This document shows, piece by piece, positions 16-29,324 of a stretch of 29,970 nucleotides of DNA. The translations under genes were made by a program, and so were the position numbers. This DNA is from Octopus sinensis (Eukaryota), in the NCBI RefSeq assembly GCF_006345805.1, contig NW_021834760.1:1-29970 (forward strand), read 5' to 3'. Positions within the stretch are counted from its first letter, which is position 1; each line of letters begins with the position of its first letter. The notes beneath the pieces were generated by a model. It was not told the origin of the DNA. It saw only the letters and a program-made list of their open reading frames with translations, and did no database searches.

Positions 16-405
16 GCTGTGTGGTAAAGTAGCTGATTACCAACCACATGGTTCCGGGTTCAGTCCCACTGCGTGGTACATTGGGCAAGTGTCTTCTACT
101 GTAGCCTCGGGCTGACCAAAGCCTTGCGAGTGGATTTGGTAGATGGAAACTGAAAGAAGCCCGTCGTATATATATATGTGTGTGTGTGTGTATGTGTTTG
201 TCCCCCCAACATCGCTTGACAACCGATGCTGGTGTGTTTACGTCCCCGTAACTTAGCGGTTCGGCAAAAGAGACCGATGGAATAAGTACTAGGCTTACAA
301 AGAATAAGTCCTGGGGGGGTCGATGTGTTCGACTAAAGGCGGTGCTCTAGCATGGCCACAGTCAAATGACTGCAACAAGTAAAAAGAAAAAGAGAAAAAG
401 AGAAA
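16..405 (+). mobile_element. tRNA-derived SINE, family A (working name), near full length
   Basis: Head with A-box-like GCTGTGTGGT and B-box GTTCAGTCC (58-66), then TGGGCAAGTGTCTT, an internal (TA)n(TG)n tract and an A-rich AAAAGAG tail. Eight further homologous copies in the window. Confidence 0.9.
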
Positions 406-1024: not shown

Positions 1025-1610
1025 AGGCGGCGAGCTGGCAGGGACGTTAGCACACTGGGCGAAATGCTTAGCGGTATTTCATCTGCCGTTACATTCTGAG
1101 TTCAAATTTCGCCGAGGTCAACTTTGCCTTTCATCCTTTCGGGTTTGATAAATTAAGTACCAGTTACGCACTGGGGTCGATGTAATCTACTTAATACCTT
1201 TTTGTTTCCTCTATGTTTAGCACCTTGTGGGTAGTAAAGAAATAGGTATTTCGTCTGCCGCTACGTTCTGAGTTCAAATTCCGCCGAGGTTGACTTTGCC
1301 TTTCATCCTTTCGGGGTCGATAAATTAAGTACCAGTTACGTACTGGGATCGATGTAATCGATTTAGTCCGTTTGTCTGTCCTTGTTTGTCCTCTCTGTGT
1401 TTAGCCCCTTGTGGGTAGTAAAGAAATAGGTATTTTGTCTGCCGCTACGTTCTGAGTTCAAATTCCGCCTAGGTTGACTTTGCCTTTCATCCTTTCGGGG
1501 TCGATAAATTAAGTACCAGTTACGCACTAGAGTTAATTACATCGACTTAATCCCTTTGTCCTTGTTTGTCCCAACTATGTTTATCCCCTTGTGGGCAATA
1601 AAGAAATAAA
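1025..1610 (+). mobile_element. tRNA-derived SINE, family B: one head plus three tandem ~172-184 bp body units
   Basis: Head AGGCGGCGAGCTGGCAG. Units start at GGTATTT (1073, 1245, 1429) and each carries B-box GAGTTCAAAT. Degenerate TSD AAAAAGGACAGACC / AAAAAGGGCGGACC. Confidence 0.9.
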
Positions 1611-4489: not shown

Positions 4490-4564
4490 TCATATACATA
4501 CACACATATATGTATATATGTATGTGTAAATATATTGTATATATACATATATATATATTATATG

Positions 4565-4662
<98 letters not shown>

Positions 4663-4674
4663 ATGTATATATAT

Positions 4675-4708
<34 letters not shown>

Positions 4709-4746
4709 ATATATATAATAATATATATATATATATATATAATATA
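4490..4746. repeat. Imperfect (TA)n microsatellite
   Basis: Direct reading; explains spurious ORF 4510-4776. Confidence 0.97.
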
Positions 4747-4945
4747 CAAAATAGAAAATGGAGAAACACATCTTAATCAATGATCAACTACCAGATAATA
4801 CCCAATCACATATTTATTAAACCACTACATATGAACATTAAGGTCAAACATAATAATATAGAACAAAACAATGTACATGAAAGAGTAATATGATACAATA
4901 AGTACAGTATGTATAAGTGAATATAAATAAATACAAATATAAATA

Positions 4946-6215
4946 CGAGGGGCGTTCAATAAGTAATGCCCCTGACCCACTTGCAGTTGTTTGATCTAGC
5001 TGAAATTTTGCATGTGCACTTATTTATACCTCTATAGATTAAGTAGCGAATTACAGCTCTGAACTAATTGTGGTTTCTGATTTACAGGTGTTTGAACTGA
5101 GTCAAGTGTGAAATGGAGCCTGTTGAGTGTCAAGCAGTGATCTGGTTTTTGTATTTGAAAGGACGCACACCACGGGAGACTTTTGATGAAATGAAAGTAA
5201 CTTATGGTGTTGATGCCCCATCATATGACCTTGTAAAACGCTGGCATTGTGAATTCAAACATAGTCGGAACTCTGTGGAAACAGCTCCCAGATCTGGTCG
5301 CCCCCTTCTGCCGTTGATGAGATGTCTGTCCGTCAAGTTGAGGCTGCCATTTTGGAAGGTCAACGCATAACTATTCGCCAAATAGCCCATAAGGTCAAGA
5401 TTAGTACCGGGTCTGTAGAAACTATCATTCATGACCATTTGCATATGCAAAAGGTCTCTGCCAGATGGATTTCCAGGTTGCTCATACCTTTCCAGAAGCA
5501 AGAACGCGTTGAGTGCTCGAGGATGAATTTGGAGATGTGCCAAGAAGATGAGTCAAAATTTATCAAAAGACTGATCACACAGGATAAAACCTGGGTCCAT
5601 CACTATGATCCATAGACCAAAGCCCAGTCAATGCAGTGAAAGCACCGTGACTCACCTCCTCCAAAGAAGACAAGGGTGCAGCCCTCCGCTGACAAGGTTA
5701 TGCTCACAGTCTTCTGGGACCAGGACGGAGTAGTGATGACAGATTTCCTGGCAAAGGGTACCACAATTACAGGAGCCTATTATGCTTCACTTTTGAGGAA
5801 ATTAAGAGAAGCTATCAAAATCAAGAGGCGGGGCAAGATCAGCAAAGGCATCCTCCTCCTGCAGGACAACGCTCCGGTCCACAACTCGCGTGTCGCCAGA
5901 TCAGAAGCATAGGCGTGCAGCTATGAACTCCTCCCCTTGCACCCTCTGATTTTCACCTCTTCCCAGCCATGAAGTTGATTTTGAAAGGAAAGCGTTTCCC
6001 AGATGATGCAGCCTTGATTTGTGAAGTCACGTCGTGGTTGGAGGACCAAGCTGGGGTCTTCTACAAAAACGGTCTCCAGAGCTGTATCAAACGACGGGAG
6101 AAATGCATAACTCTGGGTAGTTCCTATGTAGGAAAAGACTAATAACTGTGCCAAGTGTCGTTGCTCTACTACTATGGGAAGTGGGTCAGGGGCATTACTT
6201 ATTGAACGCCCCTCG
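4946..6215 (+). mobile_element. Full-length (1270 bp) mariner DNA transposon, irritans-like termini
   Basis: Perfect 37-bp TIRs CGAGGGGCGTTCAATAAGTAATGCCCCTGACCCACTT (4946-4982, 6179-6215). TA TSD at 4944-45 and 6216-17. Transposase relic inside. Confidence 0.97.
5113..6142 (+). pseudogene. Mariner DDD transposase pseudogene
   Basis: Stitched reading gives the HTH region ending RSGRP, VSARWI, catalytic QDKTW / LQDNAP / LAPSDFHLFP, and ends YVGKD*. There is a frameshift near 5305, in-frame stops, and a ~22-bp deletion of the HPPYSPD codons near 5935. Confidence 0.95.
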
Positions 6216-6684
6216 TATGTTTATATTTATATTTGTATTTATTTATATTCACTTATACATACTGTACTTATTGTATCATATTACTCTTTCATGTACATTG
6301 TTTTGTTCTATATTATTATGTTTGACCTTAATGTTCATATGTAGTGGTTTAATAAATTATGTGATTGGGTATTATCTGGTTGTTGATCATTGATTAAGAT
6401 GTGTTTCTCCATTTTCTTATTTTGAATTATTAATTTGTGGCAAAACATTTTACCTTTGCCCATATAATACAGTAAATGAATTAATTGCATCGCAATTCTT
6501 AACATTTATGTATTAATTTGTTGGGTGCTTTACTAGCAGTATATTGGATATATGTTATCCCATAGAGGGTTGCACTTACAACCCCTATCTCAATTTGTAT
6601 ATATATATATATATTAATAAAAGGAATTCCAACCTTGTCTGATTTTCACGTTTTATTTACAATCTTATAATGATATATTATAAG

Positions 6685-7739: not shown

Positions 7740-7740
<1 letters not shown>
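7470..7740 (+). mobile_element. 5'-truncated copy of AAT-tailed non-autonomous element H
   Basis: Homologous to the reverse complement of ~27764-28035; ends CTCTCTCACTC(AAT)n. Confidence 0.8.
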
Positions 7741-7773
<33 letters not shown>

Positions 7774-7925
7774 TAATAACATCGGAAAAATACCTTAGGA
7801 ATGAGAACCCAGGTTCGAAATTTCCTCAAGACACCTGAAGAAGGCTGGACGGTATATTAGCCGAAATGTTGTGTTAAAAACAAACAAGATGAGGACAAAT
7901 ATCCGTCGAATGTACATAATGTACA
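7741..7925 (+). mobile_element. (AAT)n + hammerhead-bearing module, without tRNA head
   Basis: Homologous to 27203-27410 and to the reverse complement of 26905-27124. Hammerhead at 7830-7875: GACAC-CUGAAGA-A-GGCU...AGCC-GAAA-UG-UU-GUGUU, with helix III C>U. Confidence 0.85.
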
Positions 7926-7981
7926 TTTAACCTATGTGCAACAGCATCGGTAAATATATACACACACATATATACATATAT

Positions 7982-8146
7982 ACGACGGGCTTCTTTCAAT
8001 TTCCGTCTACCATATCCACTTACAAGGCATTGGTCGGCCCTTGGCTATAGTAGAAGACACTTGCCCAAGGTACCACGCAGTGGGATTGAACCCGGAACCA
8101 TGTGGCTGGTAAGCAAACTACTTACTACACAGCCAGTCCTACGCCT

Positions 8147-14978: not shown

Positions 14979-15347
14979 ATTCTTTTATTCTTTTATTCCT
15001 TTTGTTGTTTCTGTCATTTGACTGCGGCCATGCTGGAACACACGCCTTTAGTCGAGCAAATCGATCCTAGGACTTATTCTTTGTAAGCCTAGTACTTACT
15101 CTATCGGTCCCTCTTGCCGAACCGCTAAGTGACGGGTACGTAAAGACACCAGCATCGGTCGTCAAGCGATGTTGGAGGAGACAAACACAGACACACAAAC
15201 ATATACATATATATATATTTATATATATATACGACGGGCTTCTTTCAGTTTCCGTCTACCAAACCCACTCACAAAGTTTTGGTTGGCCCGAGGCTATAGT
15301 AGAAGACACCATGTGGTTGGTAAGCAAGCTACCTACCACACAGCCAT
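14979..15347 (-). mobile_element. Family A SINE with internal deletion of the B-box region
   Basis: GAAGACAC|CATGTGG at ~15309 replaces the ~37 bp TTGCCCAAGG...GAACCCGGAAC seen in the copies at 20881-20930 and 21721-21770. Confidence 0.88.
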
Positions 15348-18816: not shown

Positions 18817-19053
18817 TGGCCGTTCGCCAGCCTCGTCTGGCACCTGTGTCGGTGGCACATAAGAAAACACCATCTGAGCGTGGCCGTCTGCCAGCCTCGT
18901 CTGGCACCTGTGTCGGTGGCACATAAGAAACACCATCCGAGCGTGGCCGTCTGCCAGCCTCGTCTGGCACCTGTGTCGGTGGCACATAAAAAACACCATC
19001 CGAGCGTGGCCGTCTGCCAGCCTCGTCTGGCACCTGTGTCGGTGGCACATAAA
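18817..19053 (+). repeat. 63-64 bp minisatellite, about 3.7 near-identical copies
   Basis: Unit starts TGGCCG at 18817, 18881, 18944 and 19007; no variable spacers. Confidence 0.97.
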
Positions 19054-19230
19054 ATCACCCACTACACTCTCGGAGTGGTTGGCGTTAGGAAGGACATCTA
19101 GCTGTAGAAACACTGCCAGATCTGACTGGCCTGGTGCAGCCTTCGGGCTTGCCAGACCCCAGTTGAACCGTCCAACCCATGCTAGCATGGAAAGCGAACG
19201 TTAAACGATGATGATGATGATGATGATGAT
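18817..19230 (+). mobile_element. 5'-truncated retroposon 3' end with (GAT)n tail, including the minisatellite
   Basis: After the repeats: GGTTGGCGTTAGGAAGGACATCTAGCTGTAGAAA, resembling the GGAAGGGCATCCGGC motif of many invertebrate SINEs, then CCAACCCATGCTAGCATGGAAAGCGAACGTTAAAC(GAT)n. Confidence 0.6.
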
Positions 19231-19342: not shown

Positions 19343-19758
19343 AGCCGTGTGGACAAGAAGCCCGCTTTGAAACTTTTCTGATCCCCTGTGCGGCACCTTG
19401 AGCAATCATCTTCAATTATAGCCCTAGGCTGACCAATGACTAGCGAGTGATGTCAGTAGACGGAAAGTAAAAAGAAAATCGTTGTGTGCGTGTATATATA
19501 TATATATGTGTGTGTTGTGTGTGTGTATGTGTGCGCGCGCGCGTTTGTGTGTCTGTGTTTGCCCCCCCCCCCAACATCGCTTGGCAACCGATACTAGTGT
19601 GTTTACGTCCCCGTAACCTAGCGGTTCGGCCAAAAGAGACCGATAGAGTAAGTACTAGGCTTACACAGAATAAGTCCTGGGGCCGATTTGCTCGACTAAA
19701 GGCGGTGCTCCAGCATGGCCGCTGTCAAATGACTGAAACTAGTAAGAGAGTAAAAGAG
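19343..19758 (+). mobile_element. Family A SINE, diverged head, followed by (TG)n to ~19866
   Basis: The 3' half 19550-19758 aligns closely to 190-400. Confidence 0.85.
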
Positions 19759-21149: not shown

Positions 21150-22540
21150 TTTACTTATTTTGGTGTATTCTCTGTATCTTTGTTTTTTTATCTAACTTCT
21201 TTCTCTGTTGCAGGTTTTTTTTTTATGTTATATTTTCTTTGTGAGTCAATATTCTTCCTTTGGGATGTCAGCTGAACTTTTCTTTGTCTTTCCAAATGAT
21301 ACGCATTATATATTTCGATTTTATATTTGGTTTACAAGATTCTTGATGTTGACTTGCGTCTTGAAACAAATTTTCTTGTATCCCAGGAGGATCATTATGC
21401 CAATAATAAACGCACTCTTCTACTCTTTACTCTTTTACTTGTTTCAGTCATTTGACTGCGGCCATGCTGGAGCGCTGCCTTGAGTCGAGCAAATCGACCT
21501 CAAGACTTATTCTTTGTAAGCCTAGTACTTATTGTATCAGTGTCTTTTGCCTAACCGCTAAGTTACGGGGACGTAAACACGCCAGCATCGGTTGTAAAGC
21601 GATGTTGGGGAGACAGACACAAACACACACACACACATATATATATATACGACGGGCTTCTTTCAGTTTCCGTCTACCGAATCCACTCACAAGGCTTTGG
21701 TCGGCCCGAGGCTATAGTAGAAGACACTTGCCCAAGGTGCCGCGCAGTGGGACTGAACCCGGAACCACGTGGTTGGTTAGCAAGCTACTTACCACACAGC
21801 CACTCCTACGCACTAAGTAGTTCTGTTTCACTTCATGTATTATTAGTCAATTCTTTATCTAACCAATAGACTATTTGACTAATCGTTTGGTCAGTCACTC
21901 AATCAATCAATCAATCAATCAATCATCAATCAATCAATAAGCTAAGTTTTTCGAAATCTTTTTCATCGTCATTCGCTCTCATTTACTAATAATAATAATG
22001 AAGATGAAGTGAAATAGAACCAGTGCGTGTGTCAATTGGCGTAATGACTCTTCCCTTAAACACCAGTATTTTTTTATATTTATACTTCCTCGTATTCTTT
22101 TCTACCATGACGGTTCTCACTTCTCAATTCCACTTGTGATGTCTTGCAATCCAAATGCCTTTGTCGCCAAAGTATTCATGTTCTCGCCAAATTGTTCGCT
22201 TCGGTTATATCACTTGTGTTTACATGACGGACAATTACATTCCCAGTTTTCGTTTGCTCTCCCACTTTAGCCCTATCAACATTCTGAAACGATTTTCTGC
22301 CACCAAAATCTTTCTATTCCATTTATTTGAACAACTTTCCTCTGCAAATCTTTATCTTCATTGCTTAATACATTCTAATCATTCAACGATGTATTTCTTC
22401 CCTCTTGCACCTCCATGTCACATTCAAGCTTTACATTTCCATGAGAATTCTTCCATTATTATTTTTTTTTCTTCTTTCAAATTTGCTTCCATTTCTTGCC
22501 GAGTGTCTTCCCGACACCTAGGGTAAAGAAATTCATAGTA
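21150..22540 (-). pseudogene. Heavily decayed Dong/R4-type LINE ORF (N-terminal region), interrupted by a SINE and (TCAA)n
   Basis: Minus-strand peptides in order: NTSDITEANNL (~22190-22215), EPSW*KRI (22093-22118) and QRKYNIKK...LQQR...KIQR (~21170-21241). These resemble the R4/Dong motifs ITETN.L, EPWWKRRI and RKYNIKKK. Confidence 0.5.
21414..21811 (-). mobile_element. Family A SINE, full length
   Basis: All domains present; possible short TSD ACGCACT. Confidence 0.92.
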
Positions 22541-26835: not shown

Positions 26836-26904
26836 GAATATATATGATATGTATACATATAATCATGAATATATACATGTACATATTTATAGATAGAATG
26901 ATAG

Positions 26905-27062
26905 ATTATTTACATTATTTATATTTGACGGATATTTGTCCTCATCTTGTTTATTGTTAACACAACGTTTCGGCTGATATACCCTCCAGCATTCATCAGG
27001 TGTCTTGGGGAAATTTGGAACCTGGGTTCTCCTTCCTAAGGTATTTTCCAATGTTATTGCTG

Positions 27063-27128
<66 letters not shown>

Positions 27129-27209: not shown

Positions 27210-27240
<31 letters not shown>

Positions 27241-27410
27241 CAACATCGAAAAATACCTTAGGAAGGAGAACCCAAGTTCGAAATTTCCCCCAATACACCT
27301 GATGAAAGCTCGAGGGTATATCAGCCGAATTGTTGTGTTAGAAACAAACAGGATGAGAACAAATATCTCTCAAATGTAAAAAATGTAAATAATCTACATA
27401 ATGTACATAA
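27203..27410 (+). mobile_element. Inverted second copy of the (AAT)n + hammerhead module
   Basis: Reverse-complement homolog of 26905-27124. Hammerhead at 27295-27339 has GAAA>GAAU; only TAGTGGTT of the head remains. Confidence 0.85.
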
Positions 27411-28486: not shown

Positions 28487-28768
28487 ATGGACAGGAAATT
28501 GGAACGATTAGACCACGTGAAATTTTGCGGTAGACATGAGATGTCTGCTACAGAGACATTTAGCATGCTTCGGCAAGCTTACGGCGATGTGGCATTGGCT
28601 CGTACGCAATGTTTCGAATGGCGCGCGCGCTTCAAAAGCGGAACAGCGTTCCTGAAAGACGATGAGCGATCTGGAAGTCCTGCCATGAGCGTCACCTCCG
28701 AAAATATTGAGAACATTCGTCAGCTGTGCATGAAGAGTGTTGGAGCTCAATCAACGACATTGCTGATG
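28487..28768 (+). pseudogene. 5' fragment of a fourth mariner transposase (HTH region)
   Basis: MDRKLE...MSATETFSMLRQAYGDVALARTQCFEWRARFKSG...KDDERSGSP...ENIENIRQL / VHEE...INDIAD, then lost at a GTT/CTT array. Confidence 0.85.
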
Positions 28769-28858
28769 TCTTGTTGTTGTTGTGTTGTTGTTGTTGTTGT
28801 TCTTCTTCTTCTTCTTCTTCTTCTTCTTCTTCTTTTCTTCTTCTTCTTCTTCTTCTTC

Positions 28859-29324
28859 CAATCAGGACTCACGCCATTAGCCACAAAGAATAATCTCTAA
28901 TTCGAGCCTACTCTAAGCAACTAAGAATGCGTGTGGCAACTTGAAGATCCACCCACGAAATGCGATAGCCTGCACAGGCGCGAAAGCTACGTTGTTATCC
29001 TCATTCCGTATACGGTGGCTTTTAACGGGTGCAAAGCTGAACCATCCGGGGATACAGAGGATTCGTAATCTAGACTAGGGTCTGAAAGTTTACCACACCA
29101 TAGTGGCTTACACCATGGTTCCTCTGCTTTGTGGCAGAAGTAGGAAGAAAGAGTGAGAGAAAGTTATGGTGAAAGAGTACAGCGGGGTTTACACACAGAG
29201 CCCCGCCGGAGCCTCGTGGAGCTTAGGTGTGTTTGCTCAATAAACACTCACAATGCCCGGTCTGGGAATGGAACCCACGTTCTTACGACCGCGAGTCCGC
29301 TACCCTAACCACTGGGCCATTGCG
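28859..29324 (-). mobile_element. Probable SINE family F: E-type head + unrelated body + (GAA)n/(CAA)n tail
   Basis: 29140-29324 aligns to 25345-25534. The GC-richer body runs without a break into CCTGATTGG(AAG)n. No convincing TSD, so unity of head and body is inferred. Confidence 0.6.

What the first reader, a model, noticed from the sequence alone, without database searches (positions are those of the whole stretch)
4747..6424. Mariner inserted at the tip of a near-perfect ~400-bp palindrome
The ~200-bp flanks are reverse complements with only 3 differences. Removing the mariner and one TA gives ...ATACAAATATAAATA-TGTTTA-TATTTATATTTGTAT..., a hairpin with a 6-nt loop and the target TA directly beside the loop. 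Such palindromes are usually unstable; the 1.27-kb insert now acts as a spacer and extends the stem by the 37-bp TIRs. Arms and TIRs are almost identical although the transposase is full of lesions, hinting at arm-to-arm gene conversion or at formation of the palindrome after insertion. The outer ends (TA|CAAAATA...TATTTTG|AA) could be those of a TA-targeting foldback MITE, making a composite element possible.
Basis: partly seen in the sequence, partly recalled or inferred. Interest (0 to 1): 0.75.

Follow-up and report, generated by a model that had tools for sequence, protein, structure and literature searches.

The report
Dead mariner nested in octopus palindrome
A broken mariner "jumping gene" in an octopus genome sits almost exactly at the centre of a 406-base AT-rich DNA palindrome; this is most likely an ordinary nested transposon insertion, with two mild statistical oddities that only the host genome can settle.

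Summary
Window 4747-4945 and 6224-6424 are reverse complements with one mismatch and two one-base indels, and the inner 134 nt are identical. They flank a 1270-bp mariner (4946-6215) with 37-nt perfect inverted ends and a TA duplication. Removing the mariner and one TA leaves a 406-bp hairpin with a 4-6 nt loop.

The host is an octopus. The mariner is a DD34D element. Four other full-length copies lie in non-palindromic DNA; the three with readable ends show the same TA|CGAGG...CCTCG|TA boundaries.

My best reading is cut-and-paste insertion into a pre-existing palindrome. The palindrome's symmetry axis lies a few bases outside the mariner, not on the mariner's own axis.

Two oddities remain:
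- The copy has 28 private substitutions in 929 bp, which predicts about 7-9 arm-to-arm substitutions. One is seen (P about 0.002-0.005).
- Only 3 of 62 TA sites lie as close to the centre (p about 0.05).

No second copy of the arm and no target-site duplication at the outer ends was found, but no octopus genome could be searched. Whether this is a MITE, a local inverted duplication or a case of gene conversion stays open. Interest is low to moderate.

The parts
4747..4945 (.). Left arm of the palindrome (199 nt, 76% A+T, no CpG)
   Evidence: Reverse complement of 6224-6424 with 1 mismatch and 2 one-base indels. Composition.
4944..4945 (.). Left copy of the TA target-site duplication (also the last two bases of the left arm)
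   Evidence: Sequence. Mariner copies L004 and L005 show the same TA|CGAGG junction.
4946..6215 (+). Defective, non-autonomous mariner-like element of 1270 bp
   Evidence: Pfam Transposase_1 (E = 1.7e-22) and HTH_48. 86% amino-acid identity to the intact 350-aa transposase P0001. 88-90% nucleotide identity to full-length copies L004, L005, L007 and L008, and 96.6% to L003.
4946..4982 (+). 5' terminal inverted repeat (37 nt perfect; consensus is 39 nt, with a C-to-G change at position 38)
5113..6142 (+). Transposase pseudogene with a 1-bp deletion at 5300/5301, a 22-bp deletion at about 5934/5935, and stops at 5613, 5637 and 5910
   Evidence: Three-frame translation. Alignment A1 shows both deletions shared with L003 and the stops private to this copy.
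6179..6215 (-). 3' terminal inverted repeat (identical to the family consensus)
6216..6217 (.). Right copy of the TA target-site duplication
6218..6223 (.). Centre of the palindrome (TGTTTA). The outer T and A can pair, leaving a 4-nt GTTT loop. The symmetry axis lies between 6220 and 6221.
6224..6424 (.). Right arm of the palindrome (201 nt)
4506..4746 (.). (TA)n microsatellite that abuts the outer end of the left arm only. It is context, and may hide or have replaced any left-hand target-site duplication.
   Evidence: Tandem Repeats Finder row 4506-4746, period 2, 125 copies.

Best explanation
An already defective mariner-like element was mobilised in trans. It integrated by ordinary cut-and-paste into a TA dinucleotide 3-4 bp from the symmetry centre of a pre-existing palindrome in an octopus genome, and duplicated that TA. 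The palindrome is about 406 bp, 77% A+T and near-perfect.

The 1.27-kb insert now separates the arms. By established knowledge of palindrome instability, this should make hairpin or cruciform extrusion much harder, and so favour survival of the structure.

I take the arms to be so alike because both the palindrome and this insertion are young relative to the copy's own lineage. On this reading the copy collected most of its private mutations at one or more earlier sites, and it needed intact terminal repeats to make its last jump.

Shown: the anatomy, the boundaries, the TA duplication, the inherited frameshifts and the octopus host.
Inferred: the order of events, the stabilising effect and the timing.

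The origin of the palindrome itself is not settled. It could be a hairpin-type MITE or foldback repeat, or a local inverted duplication.
For: 1. The element ends are exactly TA|CGAGGGG...CCCCTCG|TA. Full-length copies L004 and L005 show the same junctions, and their flanks are not palindromic. L008 runs to the end of its contig, so only its left junction is available.
2. Removing 4946-6217 leaves a continuous hairpin (-207 kcal/mol against -29 for shuffles).
3. The arms' symmetry axis (6220/6221) lies outside the mariner. There are 0 nt between the left arm and the mariner but 8 nt (TA + TGTTTA) on the right. Insertion beside the loop of an existing hairpin predicts exactly this. Copying a flank across the paired mariner ends predicts flanks in register with those ends.
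4. Both frameshifting deletions are shared with L003, whose own private branch is short (4 substitutions against 28). The copy therefore belongs to a defective subfamily that must have been moved by transposase supplied in trans.
5. An intact 350-aa DD34D transposase of the same family exists (P0001).
6. Tc1-Mariner elements are reported as numerous and recently active in Octopus vulgaris (PMC13282606).
7. The terminal repeats of this copy are consensus-like (0 changes in 2 x 37 nt), as a recent jump requires.
8. The host is an octopus. The window shares 61 repeat matches, up to 93% identical, with a random O. bimaculoides locus. The window's SINE-derived reading frames hit three O. bimaculoides proteins and one unnamed metaclust entry.
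Against: 1. Only 3 of 62 TA sites in the palindrome are as close to the centre (p about 0.05). Random insertion does not predict the tip position, although survivorship of centrally interrupted palindromes and the way the finding was picked both inflate it.
2. If the 28 private substitutions arose at this site, the arms are too similar: 7.4-8.6 expected against 1 seen, P = 0.002-0.005. My explanation needs most of them to predate the last jump. Only one subfamily relative (L003) was available, so this is untested.
3. All three arm differences lie in the outer third (p = 0.04). Simple youth does not predict that.
4. Neither a second copy of the palindrome nor a target-site duplication at its outer ends was found, so where the palindrome came from is unexplained.
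Confidence: 0.58

Rival explanations
1. The order of events is the same (insertion into a pre-existing palindrome), but the insertion is old. The 236-nt stem (arms plus terminal repeats) has since been kept nearly identical by intrachromosomal arm-to-arm gene conversion or hairpin-templated mismatch correction. This would be a miniature version of what is documented for sex-chromosome palindromes.
For: - Arm-to-arm substitutions are 1, against 7.4-8.6 expected from the copy's private divergence (P = 0.002-0.005).
- The terminal repeats carry 1 change in 78 nt, against 4.4 expected from divergence to the family consensus (P = 0.07). Other copies carry 2-4 changes there.
- All differences lie at the outer end of the stem (p = 0.04).
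- Arm-to-arm conversion in palindromes with spacers is well documented (PMC3723533, PMC8600007).
Against: - The dating assumes every private substitution arose at this locus. A cut-and-paste element can carry old mutations to a new site.
- Known converting palindromes have arms of kilobases, not 0.2 kb.
- Three differences are too few to show conversion tracts or GC bias.
- The terminal-repeat result is not significant.
Confidence: 0.2
2. The palindrome was built around the mariner after it inserted. During replication or repair the mariner's own terminal repeats paired within one strand. The 3' end then copied about 200 nt of the opposite flank (fold-back template switching) before returning to its template.
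For: - It explains the central position of the mariner without coincidence (p about 0.05 otherwise).
- It explains arms younger than the copy.
- It explains the absence of a target-site duplication at the outer ends, and a (TA)n tract on one side only.
- Template switching is known to create perfect inverted repeats in one event (PMC10710096).
Against: - Copying across the paired terminal repeats predicts flanks in register with the mariner ends. The observed arms are offset by 6 nt (TGTTTA on one side only), so an extra slipped priming on the second TA must be assumed.
- The hairpin stems scored in that study were 30-55 bases (PMC10710096), against 199 nt here.
- I know of no precedent for this around a mariner.
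Confidence: 0.13
3. The second arm does not exist in the animal. It is an assembly or polishing artefact, such as a fold-back chimeric read.
For: Nothing positive. Reads could not be inspected, and exact look-ups of an open reading frame spanning the mariner/right-arm junction and of one inside the mariner found no independent assembly.
Against: - Fold-back chimeras invert everything up to the read end. Here the inversion is bounded to 199 nt, the 1.2-kb interior is asymmetric and complete, both outer flanks are unique, and the arms differ at three positions.
- The TA duplication and the 6-nt loop form a coherent biological structure.
Confidence: 0.04
4. The whole 1678-bp unit is one mobile composite element: a foldback or MITE-like transposon using the outer ends CAAAATAG.../...CTTATTTTG, with the mariner as cargo.
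For: Only the sharp outer boundaries of the arms.
Against: - There is no target-site duplication at the outer ends (left flank ...TA, right flank AA...).
- No other copy of the arms was found in any sequence held or searched.
- The other full-length mariner copies lack the arms.
Confidence: 0.03

Closest known systems
Nested insertion of a mariner (Tc1/mariner, DD34D) element into another repeat
   Same: TA target and TA duplication, about 1.3 kb, short perfect terminal repeats, HTH_48 and Transposase_1 domains, and a defective copy moved in trans. The copy interrupts another structured repeat.
   Different: The interrupted sequence is a near-perfect long palindrome, and the hit is 3-4 bp from its centre. 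I could not show that the interrupted sequence is itself a transposon.
Hairpin-type MITEs such as human Made1 (two 37-bp Hsmar1 terminal repeats around 6 bp; PMC1784062) and foldback elements
   Same: Near-perfect palindrome with a loop of a few bases, no coding capacity, below 800 bp, A+T-rich.
   Different: The arms are 199 nt and unrelated to the terminal repeats of the resident mariner. No TA or other target-site duplication and no second copy was found. Family membership is untested for want of the host genome.
Palindromic AT-rich repeats (PATRRs) of human chromosomes 11, 17 and 22 (from my own knowledge)
   Same: Several hundred bp, A+T-rich, near-perfect palindrome. It is expected to extrude a cruciform and to be unstable unless the centre is asymmetric.
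   Different: Different organism. Here a 1.27-kb transposon supplies the central asymmetry. No rearrangement is known.
Sex-chromosome palindromes with spacers, kept above 99% identical by arm-to-arm gene conversion (PMC3723533, PMC8600007)
   Same: Inverted arms around a unique spacer, with arm identity higher than the apparent age suggests.
   Different: The arms here are 0.2 kb, not 9 kb to 1.5 Mb. Conversion is only one of three explanations here and was not demonstrated.
Template-switch mutations that create hairpins in one step (PMC10710096)
   Same: They could produce a perfect inverted copy with a short loop and no target-site duplication.
   Different: The hairpin stems scored in that study were 30-55 bases. 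The register with the mariner ends is off by 6 nt.

Membership tests
mariner (Tc1/mariner superfamily, DD34D) | TA target-site duplication | tested here: met
   TA at 4944-4945 and 6216-6217. The same TA|CGAGG...CCTCG|TA junctions occur in L004 and L005.
mariner (Tc1/mariner superfamily, DD34D) | Short terminal inverted repeats and a length of about 1.3 kb | tested here: met
   37 nt perfect (consensus 39 nt); element 1270 bp.
mariner (Tc1/mariner superfamily, DD34D) | Transposase with an N-terminal Mos1-type HTH and the mariner catalytic domain | tested here: met
   Pfam HTH_48 (26.3 bits, cut-off 24.1) and Transposase_1 (79.5 bits, cut-off 24) on the stitched translation.
mariner (Tc1/mariner superfamily, DD34D) | Catalytic triad D, D, 34 residues, D | tested here: met
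   In the intact relative P0001 the acidic residues are D158, D252 and D287, with 34 residues between the last two. In the window copy the 22-bp deletion removes 7 codons of this spacer and shifts the frame.
mariner (Tc1/mariner superfamily, DD34D) | Autonomous copy (intact reading frame) | tested here: not met
   Two frameshifts and three stops. It is a non-autonomous member.
MITE or foldback transposon (for the palindrome) | Target-site duplication flanking the outer ends | tested here: not met
   Left flank ...AATATA, right flank AATTATT...; no direct repeat of 2-10 nt (by eye; the scripted check was off by one or two bases). A (TA)n tract on the left could have erased it.
MITE or foldback transposon (for the palindrome) | Many copies at unrelated loci | tested here: inconclusive
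   No copy in the 30-kb window or in 25 kb of O. bimaculoides and the other loci. None in 5.8 billion proteins using a six-frame query. None in the JGI metagenome, GTDB genome or IMG/VR contig collections. None of these holds an octopus genome in searchable DNA form.
MITE or foldback transposon (for the palindrome) | Small, non-coding, with terminal inverted repeats | tested here: met
   406 bp and only spurious short reading frames. The arms are inverted repeats by construction.
Palindrome maintained by arm-to-arm gene conversion | Arm identity higher than the age of the structure allows | tested here: inconclusive
   1 substitution against 7.4-8.6 expected (P = 0.002-0.005). But the age rests on the assumption that all private substitutions of the mariner arose at this locus.
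Palindrome maintained by arm-to-arm gene conversion | Observed exchange of variants between arms, across individuals or species | not testable with these tools
   Needs population or cross-species data for this locus.

The most novel reading that the evidence does not exclude
The 236-nt stem (arms plus mariner terminal repeats) is not just young. One possibility is that it is actively homogenised by arm-to-arm conversion or hairpin-templated repair across a 1.2-kb spacer. Another is that the palindrome was created around the mariner by fold-back copying anchored on its terminal repeats. Either way, a transposon's inverted ends would be shaping or maintaining a larger palindrome. A related reading is that mariner integration is drawn to the tip of an extruded hairpin.
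Probability: 0.25. Interest if true: 0.5.

Novelty: new member of a known kind. Interest (0 to 1): 0.25.

Why it matters
As it stands this is a tidy textbook-style example, and it yields no new mechanism. A dead mariner copy, moved by transposase supplied in trans, has landed beside the loop of a long A+T-rich palindrome, and now provides the central spacer expected to stabilise it.

It would matter more if the host genome showed one of three things:
- The empty palindrome is old and the arms are being homogenised. That would be gene conversion at a 0.2-kb scale.
- The palindrome exists only where the mariner is. That would mean terminal repeats seed larger palindromes.
- Mariners of this family are repeatedly found at hairpin tips. 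That would mean structure-directed target choice.

All three can be tested cheaply with public octopus assemblies, which these tools cannot search.

Tried and rejected
- Other copies of the arm in the window: only low-complexity AT matches.
- Six-frame translation of the arm against 5.8 billion proteins: 216 candidates shared words with the query, none scored.
- Exact look-up of an open reading frame spanning the mariner/right-arm junction, and of one inside the mariner, to find independent assemblies of the locus: neither is on record.
- Arm 22-mer and 26-mer scans of JGI metagenome contigs, and the 22-mer against GTDB genomes and IMG/VR: 0 hits. All are poor proxies for an octopus genome.
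- Arm against 25 kb of O. bimaculoides (L006) and all other loci: nothing beyond AT-rich noise.
- Rfam and tRNA scans of the window: nothing.
- Rejected: that the broken reading frame dates the insertion. The two frameshifts are shared with L003.
- Rejected: that the perfect terminal repeats are remarkable on their own (P = 0.07-0.11).
- Rejected: a crustacean host. The closest named mariner proteins are crustacean, but the window's SINE content is octopus.
- Rejected: that the arms derive from the mariner's own terminal repeats, as Made1 does. There is no similarity.
- My first scripted check for a target-site duplication used boundaries off by one or two bases. I redid it by eye on the true 4747/6424 boundaries.

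Full report
**1.

Reading the region and the repeat search show inverted arms around a 1.27-kb insert. A local alignment and BLAST put the arms at 4747-4945 (199 nt) and 6224-6424 (201 nt). They are 98.5% complementary.

The three differences, read by eye, are:
- a T/T mismatch at 4789 versus 6381;
- a one-base indel in the left arm between 4811 and 4812;
- a one-base indel in the left arm between 4752 and 4753.

The inner 134 nt are identical, and all three differences lie in the outer 68 nt.

The insert is 4946-6215, with 37-nt perfect terminal repeats and TA on both sides (4944-4945, 6216-6217). Six bases, TGTTTA (6218-6223), separate the right TA from the right arm.

With the mariner and one TA removed in a script, the arms fold as DNA into one uninterrupted hairpin with a 4-nt loop. 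Its energy is -207 kcal/mol, against -29 +/- 4 for shuffles (the folded stretch was 403 nt, one or two bases inside the true ends). Chance is excluded.

**2. What the insert is**

A three-frame translation gives a mariner transposase in three frame segments.
- Pfam finds Transposase_1 (E = 1.7e-22) and the Mos1-type HTH_48 domain.
- The best relative, P0001, is an intact 350-aa protein, 86% identical.
- P0001 has D158, D252 and D287, with 34 residues between the last two. That is the DD34D signature.

Four other full-length copies were fetched: L004, L005, L007 and L008. They are 88-90% identical in nucleotides.
- L004 and L005 show the same TA|CGAGGGG...CCCCTCG|TA junctions. L008's terminal repeats match as well.
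- L007 is a Logan contig that lacks the last 9 bases at each end.
- The flanks of L004 and L005 are not palindromic. No locus contains the arm (before L007 and L008 were fetched); the flanks of L007 and L008 were not searched for it, and L007 has none.

The element's limits and its TA duplication are therefore secure.

**3. The host**

- The window is dense in simple repeats.
- Its SINE-derived reading frames hit three Octopus bimaculoides proteins and one unnamed metaclust entry.
- An octopus repeat motif that I recalled from memory occurs four times in the window, against 0 expected.
- The window shares 61 repeat matches, up to 93% identical, with an arbitrary 25-kb O. bimaculoides locus, L006.

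The window is octopus DNA. A recent repeat annotation of O. vulgaris reports many recently active Tc1-Mariner families and also MITE families (PMC13282606).

**4. Order of events**

The arms' symmetry axis lies between 6220 and 6221. That is outside the mariner and 3 bp beyond its right TA.

On the left the arm touches the mariner. On the right, 8 bases (TA + TGTTTA) intervene. Insertion into a TA next to the loop of an existing hairpin predicts exactly this.

If a flank had instead been copied across the mariner's paired terminal repeats, the arms should be in register with those repeats. They are offset by 6 nt, so that scenario needs an extra slipped priming step.

I therefore favour a pre-existing palindrome. 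This is an inference from geometry, not a demonstration.

**5. How old, and why are the arms so alike?**

Alignment A1 shows that both frameshifting deletions are shared with L003, an independent Logan contig that is 96.6% identical. The three stop codons are private to the window copy. The copy thus belongs to an already defective subfamily, and its frameshifts do not date this insertion.

The substitution counts over 929 columns are:

| Class | Count |
|---|---|
| Private to the window copy | 28 |
| Private to L003 | 4 |
| Shared by both against the rest of the family | 22-28 |

L003 is therefore close to the subfamily consensus. Of the 28 private changes, 21 start from G or C, and 6 are CpG transitions.

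I corrected for the arms' composition (47 G/C sites per arm, no CpG). Arms as old as the private branch should then differ by 7.4-8.6 substitutions. They differ by 1 (P = 0.002-0.005). Counting the two indels as well gives P = 0.03-0.06.

The terminal repeats are clean, but not significantly so:
- 0 of 74 positions changed, against 2.2 expected (P = 0.11);
- 1 of 78 changed, against 4.4 expected from divergence to the family consensus (P = 0.07).

Three readings fit these numbers:
- **The copy carried its mutations in.** It picked them up at an earlier site and jumped here late, which requires intact ends. This is my preference.
- **The arms are homogenised.**
- **The palindrome is younger than the insertion.**

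With only one subfamily relative in hand, I cannot separate them.

**6. The tip position**

The empty palindrome holds 62 TA dinucleotides, and only 3 are as close to the centre as the one used (p about 0.05). This is suggestive at most. Centrally interrupted palindromes should survive better, and this case was picked because it looks striking.

**7. What the palindrome is**

I found no target-site duplication at the outer ends. The left flank ends in TA and the right flank starts with AA. A (TA)n tract (4506-4746) abuts the left end only.

No other copy of the arm turned up in any of these:
- the window;
- L006 or the other loci;
- a six-frame query against 5.8 billion proteins;
- JGI metagenomes, GTDB genomes or IMG/VR.

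None of these collections holds an octopus genome in searchable DNA form. The choice between a hairpin MITE and a local inverted duplication stays open.

The window does contain a second inverted pair (26902-27089 / 27210-27396, 87%). Its arm is a dispersed repeat, with a third copy at 7740-7926. Inverted pairs of repeats are therefore not rare in this genome.

**8. Artefact**

A fold-back chimera would invert everything up to a read end. Here the inversion is bounded to 199 nt, the interior is asymmetric and complete, both outer flanks are unique, and the arms differ at three sites. I rate an artefact as unlikely (0.04), but I could not inspect reads.

**9. Comparison with known things**

- In function this is a nested mariner insertion.
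- The palindrome resembles hairpin MITEs such as Made1 (two 37-bp repeats around 6 bp; PMC1784062) and human palindromic AT-rich repeats (my own knowledge).
- The high arm identity recalls converting sex-chromosome palindromes (PMC3723533, PMC8600007).
- A one-step origin by template switching is known for much shorter hairpins; the stems scored in that study were 30-55 bases (PMC10710096).
- Membership in the mariner family is met on every structural criterion, except that the copy is non-autonomous.
- Membership of the palindrome in a MITE family fails the target-site-duplication test and is inconclusive on copy number.

**10. Verdict**

The structure is real and neatly resolved. It is most likely ordinary nesting (confidence about 0.6). 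Two mild anomalies, the arm identity and the central position, keep alive a 0.25 chance of something more interesting. I classify it as a new member of a known kind, with interest 0.25.

Noticed in passing
L001 1-1607 and L002 (Logan SRR31412027 / SRR31412068); corresponds to window 5088-6210: These contigs carry an intact 350-aa DD34D transposase of this family. The contig's first 28 nt are not mariner. They join at the point where the genomic copies read TTTACAG|GTGTTTGAAC in the 5' untranslated region, which looks like a splice acceptor. The 3' terminal repeat is cut 6 nt short and followed by unrelated sequence. This could be an expressed, exonised or domesticated copy. The cluster has 79 member sequences.
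   Followed up: partly
L004, L005, L008 (ENA ERZ25073763, ERZ25067889, ERZ25072293) versus window 4946-6215: Full-length copies 88-90% identical in nucleotides to the octopus copy sit in contigs with no octopus SINE in about 16 kb of flanks. The closest named proteins are crustacean (Oratosquilla oratoria 83%, Scylla paramamosain). This suggests horizontal transfer of the mariner family between distant marine animals.
   Followed up: partly
window 26902-27089 and 27210-27396; third copy 7740-7926: A second inverted pair with arms of about 188 nt, 87% complementary. Its centre holds (ATT)n, a tRNA-like piece and (AAT)n. The arm is a dispersed repeat, with a single copy at 7740-7926 (89%).
   Followed up: partly
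window 28487-28900 (+): A 137-aa open reading frame with a Mos1-type HTH_48 domain (E = 5.6e-06). It is the remnant of another Tc1/mariner element. The overlapping stretch 28367-28660 matches L006 (O. bimaculoides) at 74%.
   Followed up: no
window 126-173, 7976-8023, 15225-15272, 21643-21690 and neighbours: At least four copies of an octopus SINE-like repeat ending in ...GAAAGAAGCCCGTCGTATATAT, each followed by a TA-rich microsatellite. Copies at 19631-19754 and 21426-21549 form an inverted pair (89%).
   Followed up: partly
window 1073-1608 and 18817-19059: Tandem arrays of longer units: 184 bp x 3.0 (85% matches) and 63 bp x 3.9 (96% matches). The latter gives a repetitive open reading frame on the minus strand.
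   Followed up: no
window 5113-6041 (mariner interior): 21 of the 28 substitutions private to this copy start from G or C, and 6 are CpG transitions. This indicates a strong GC-to-AT mutation bias, and probably cytosine methylation, in this genome.
   Followed up: partly
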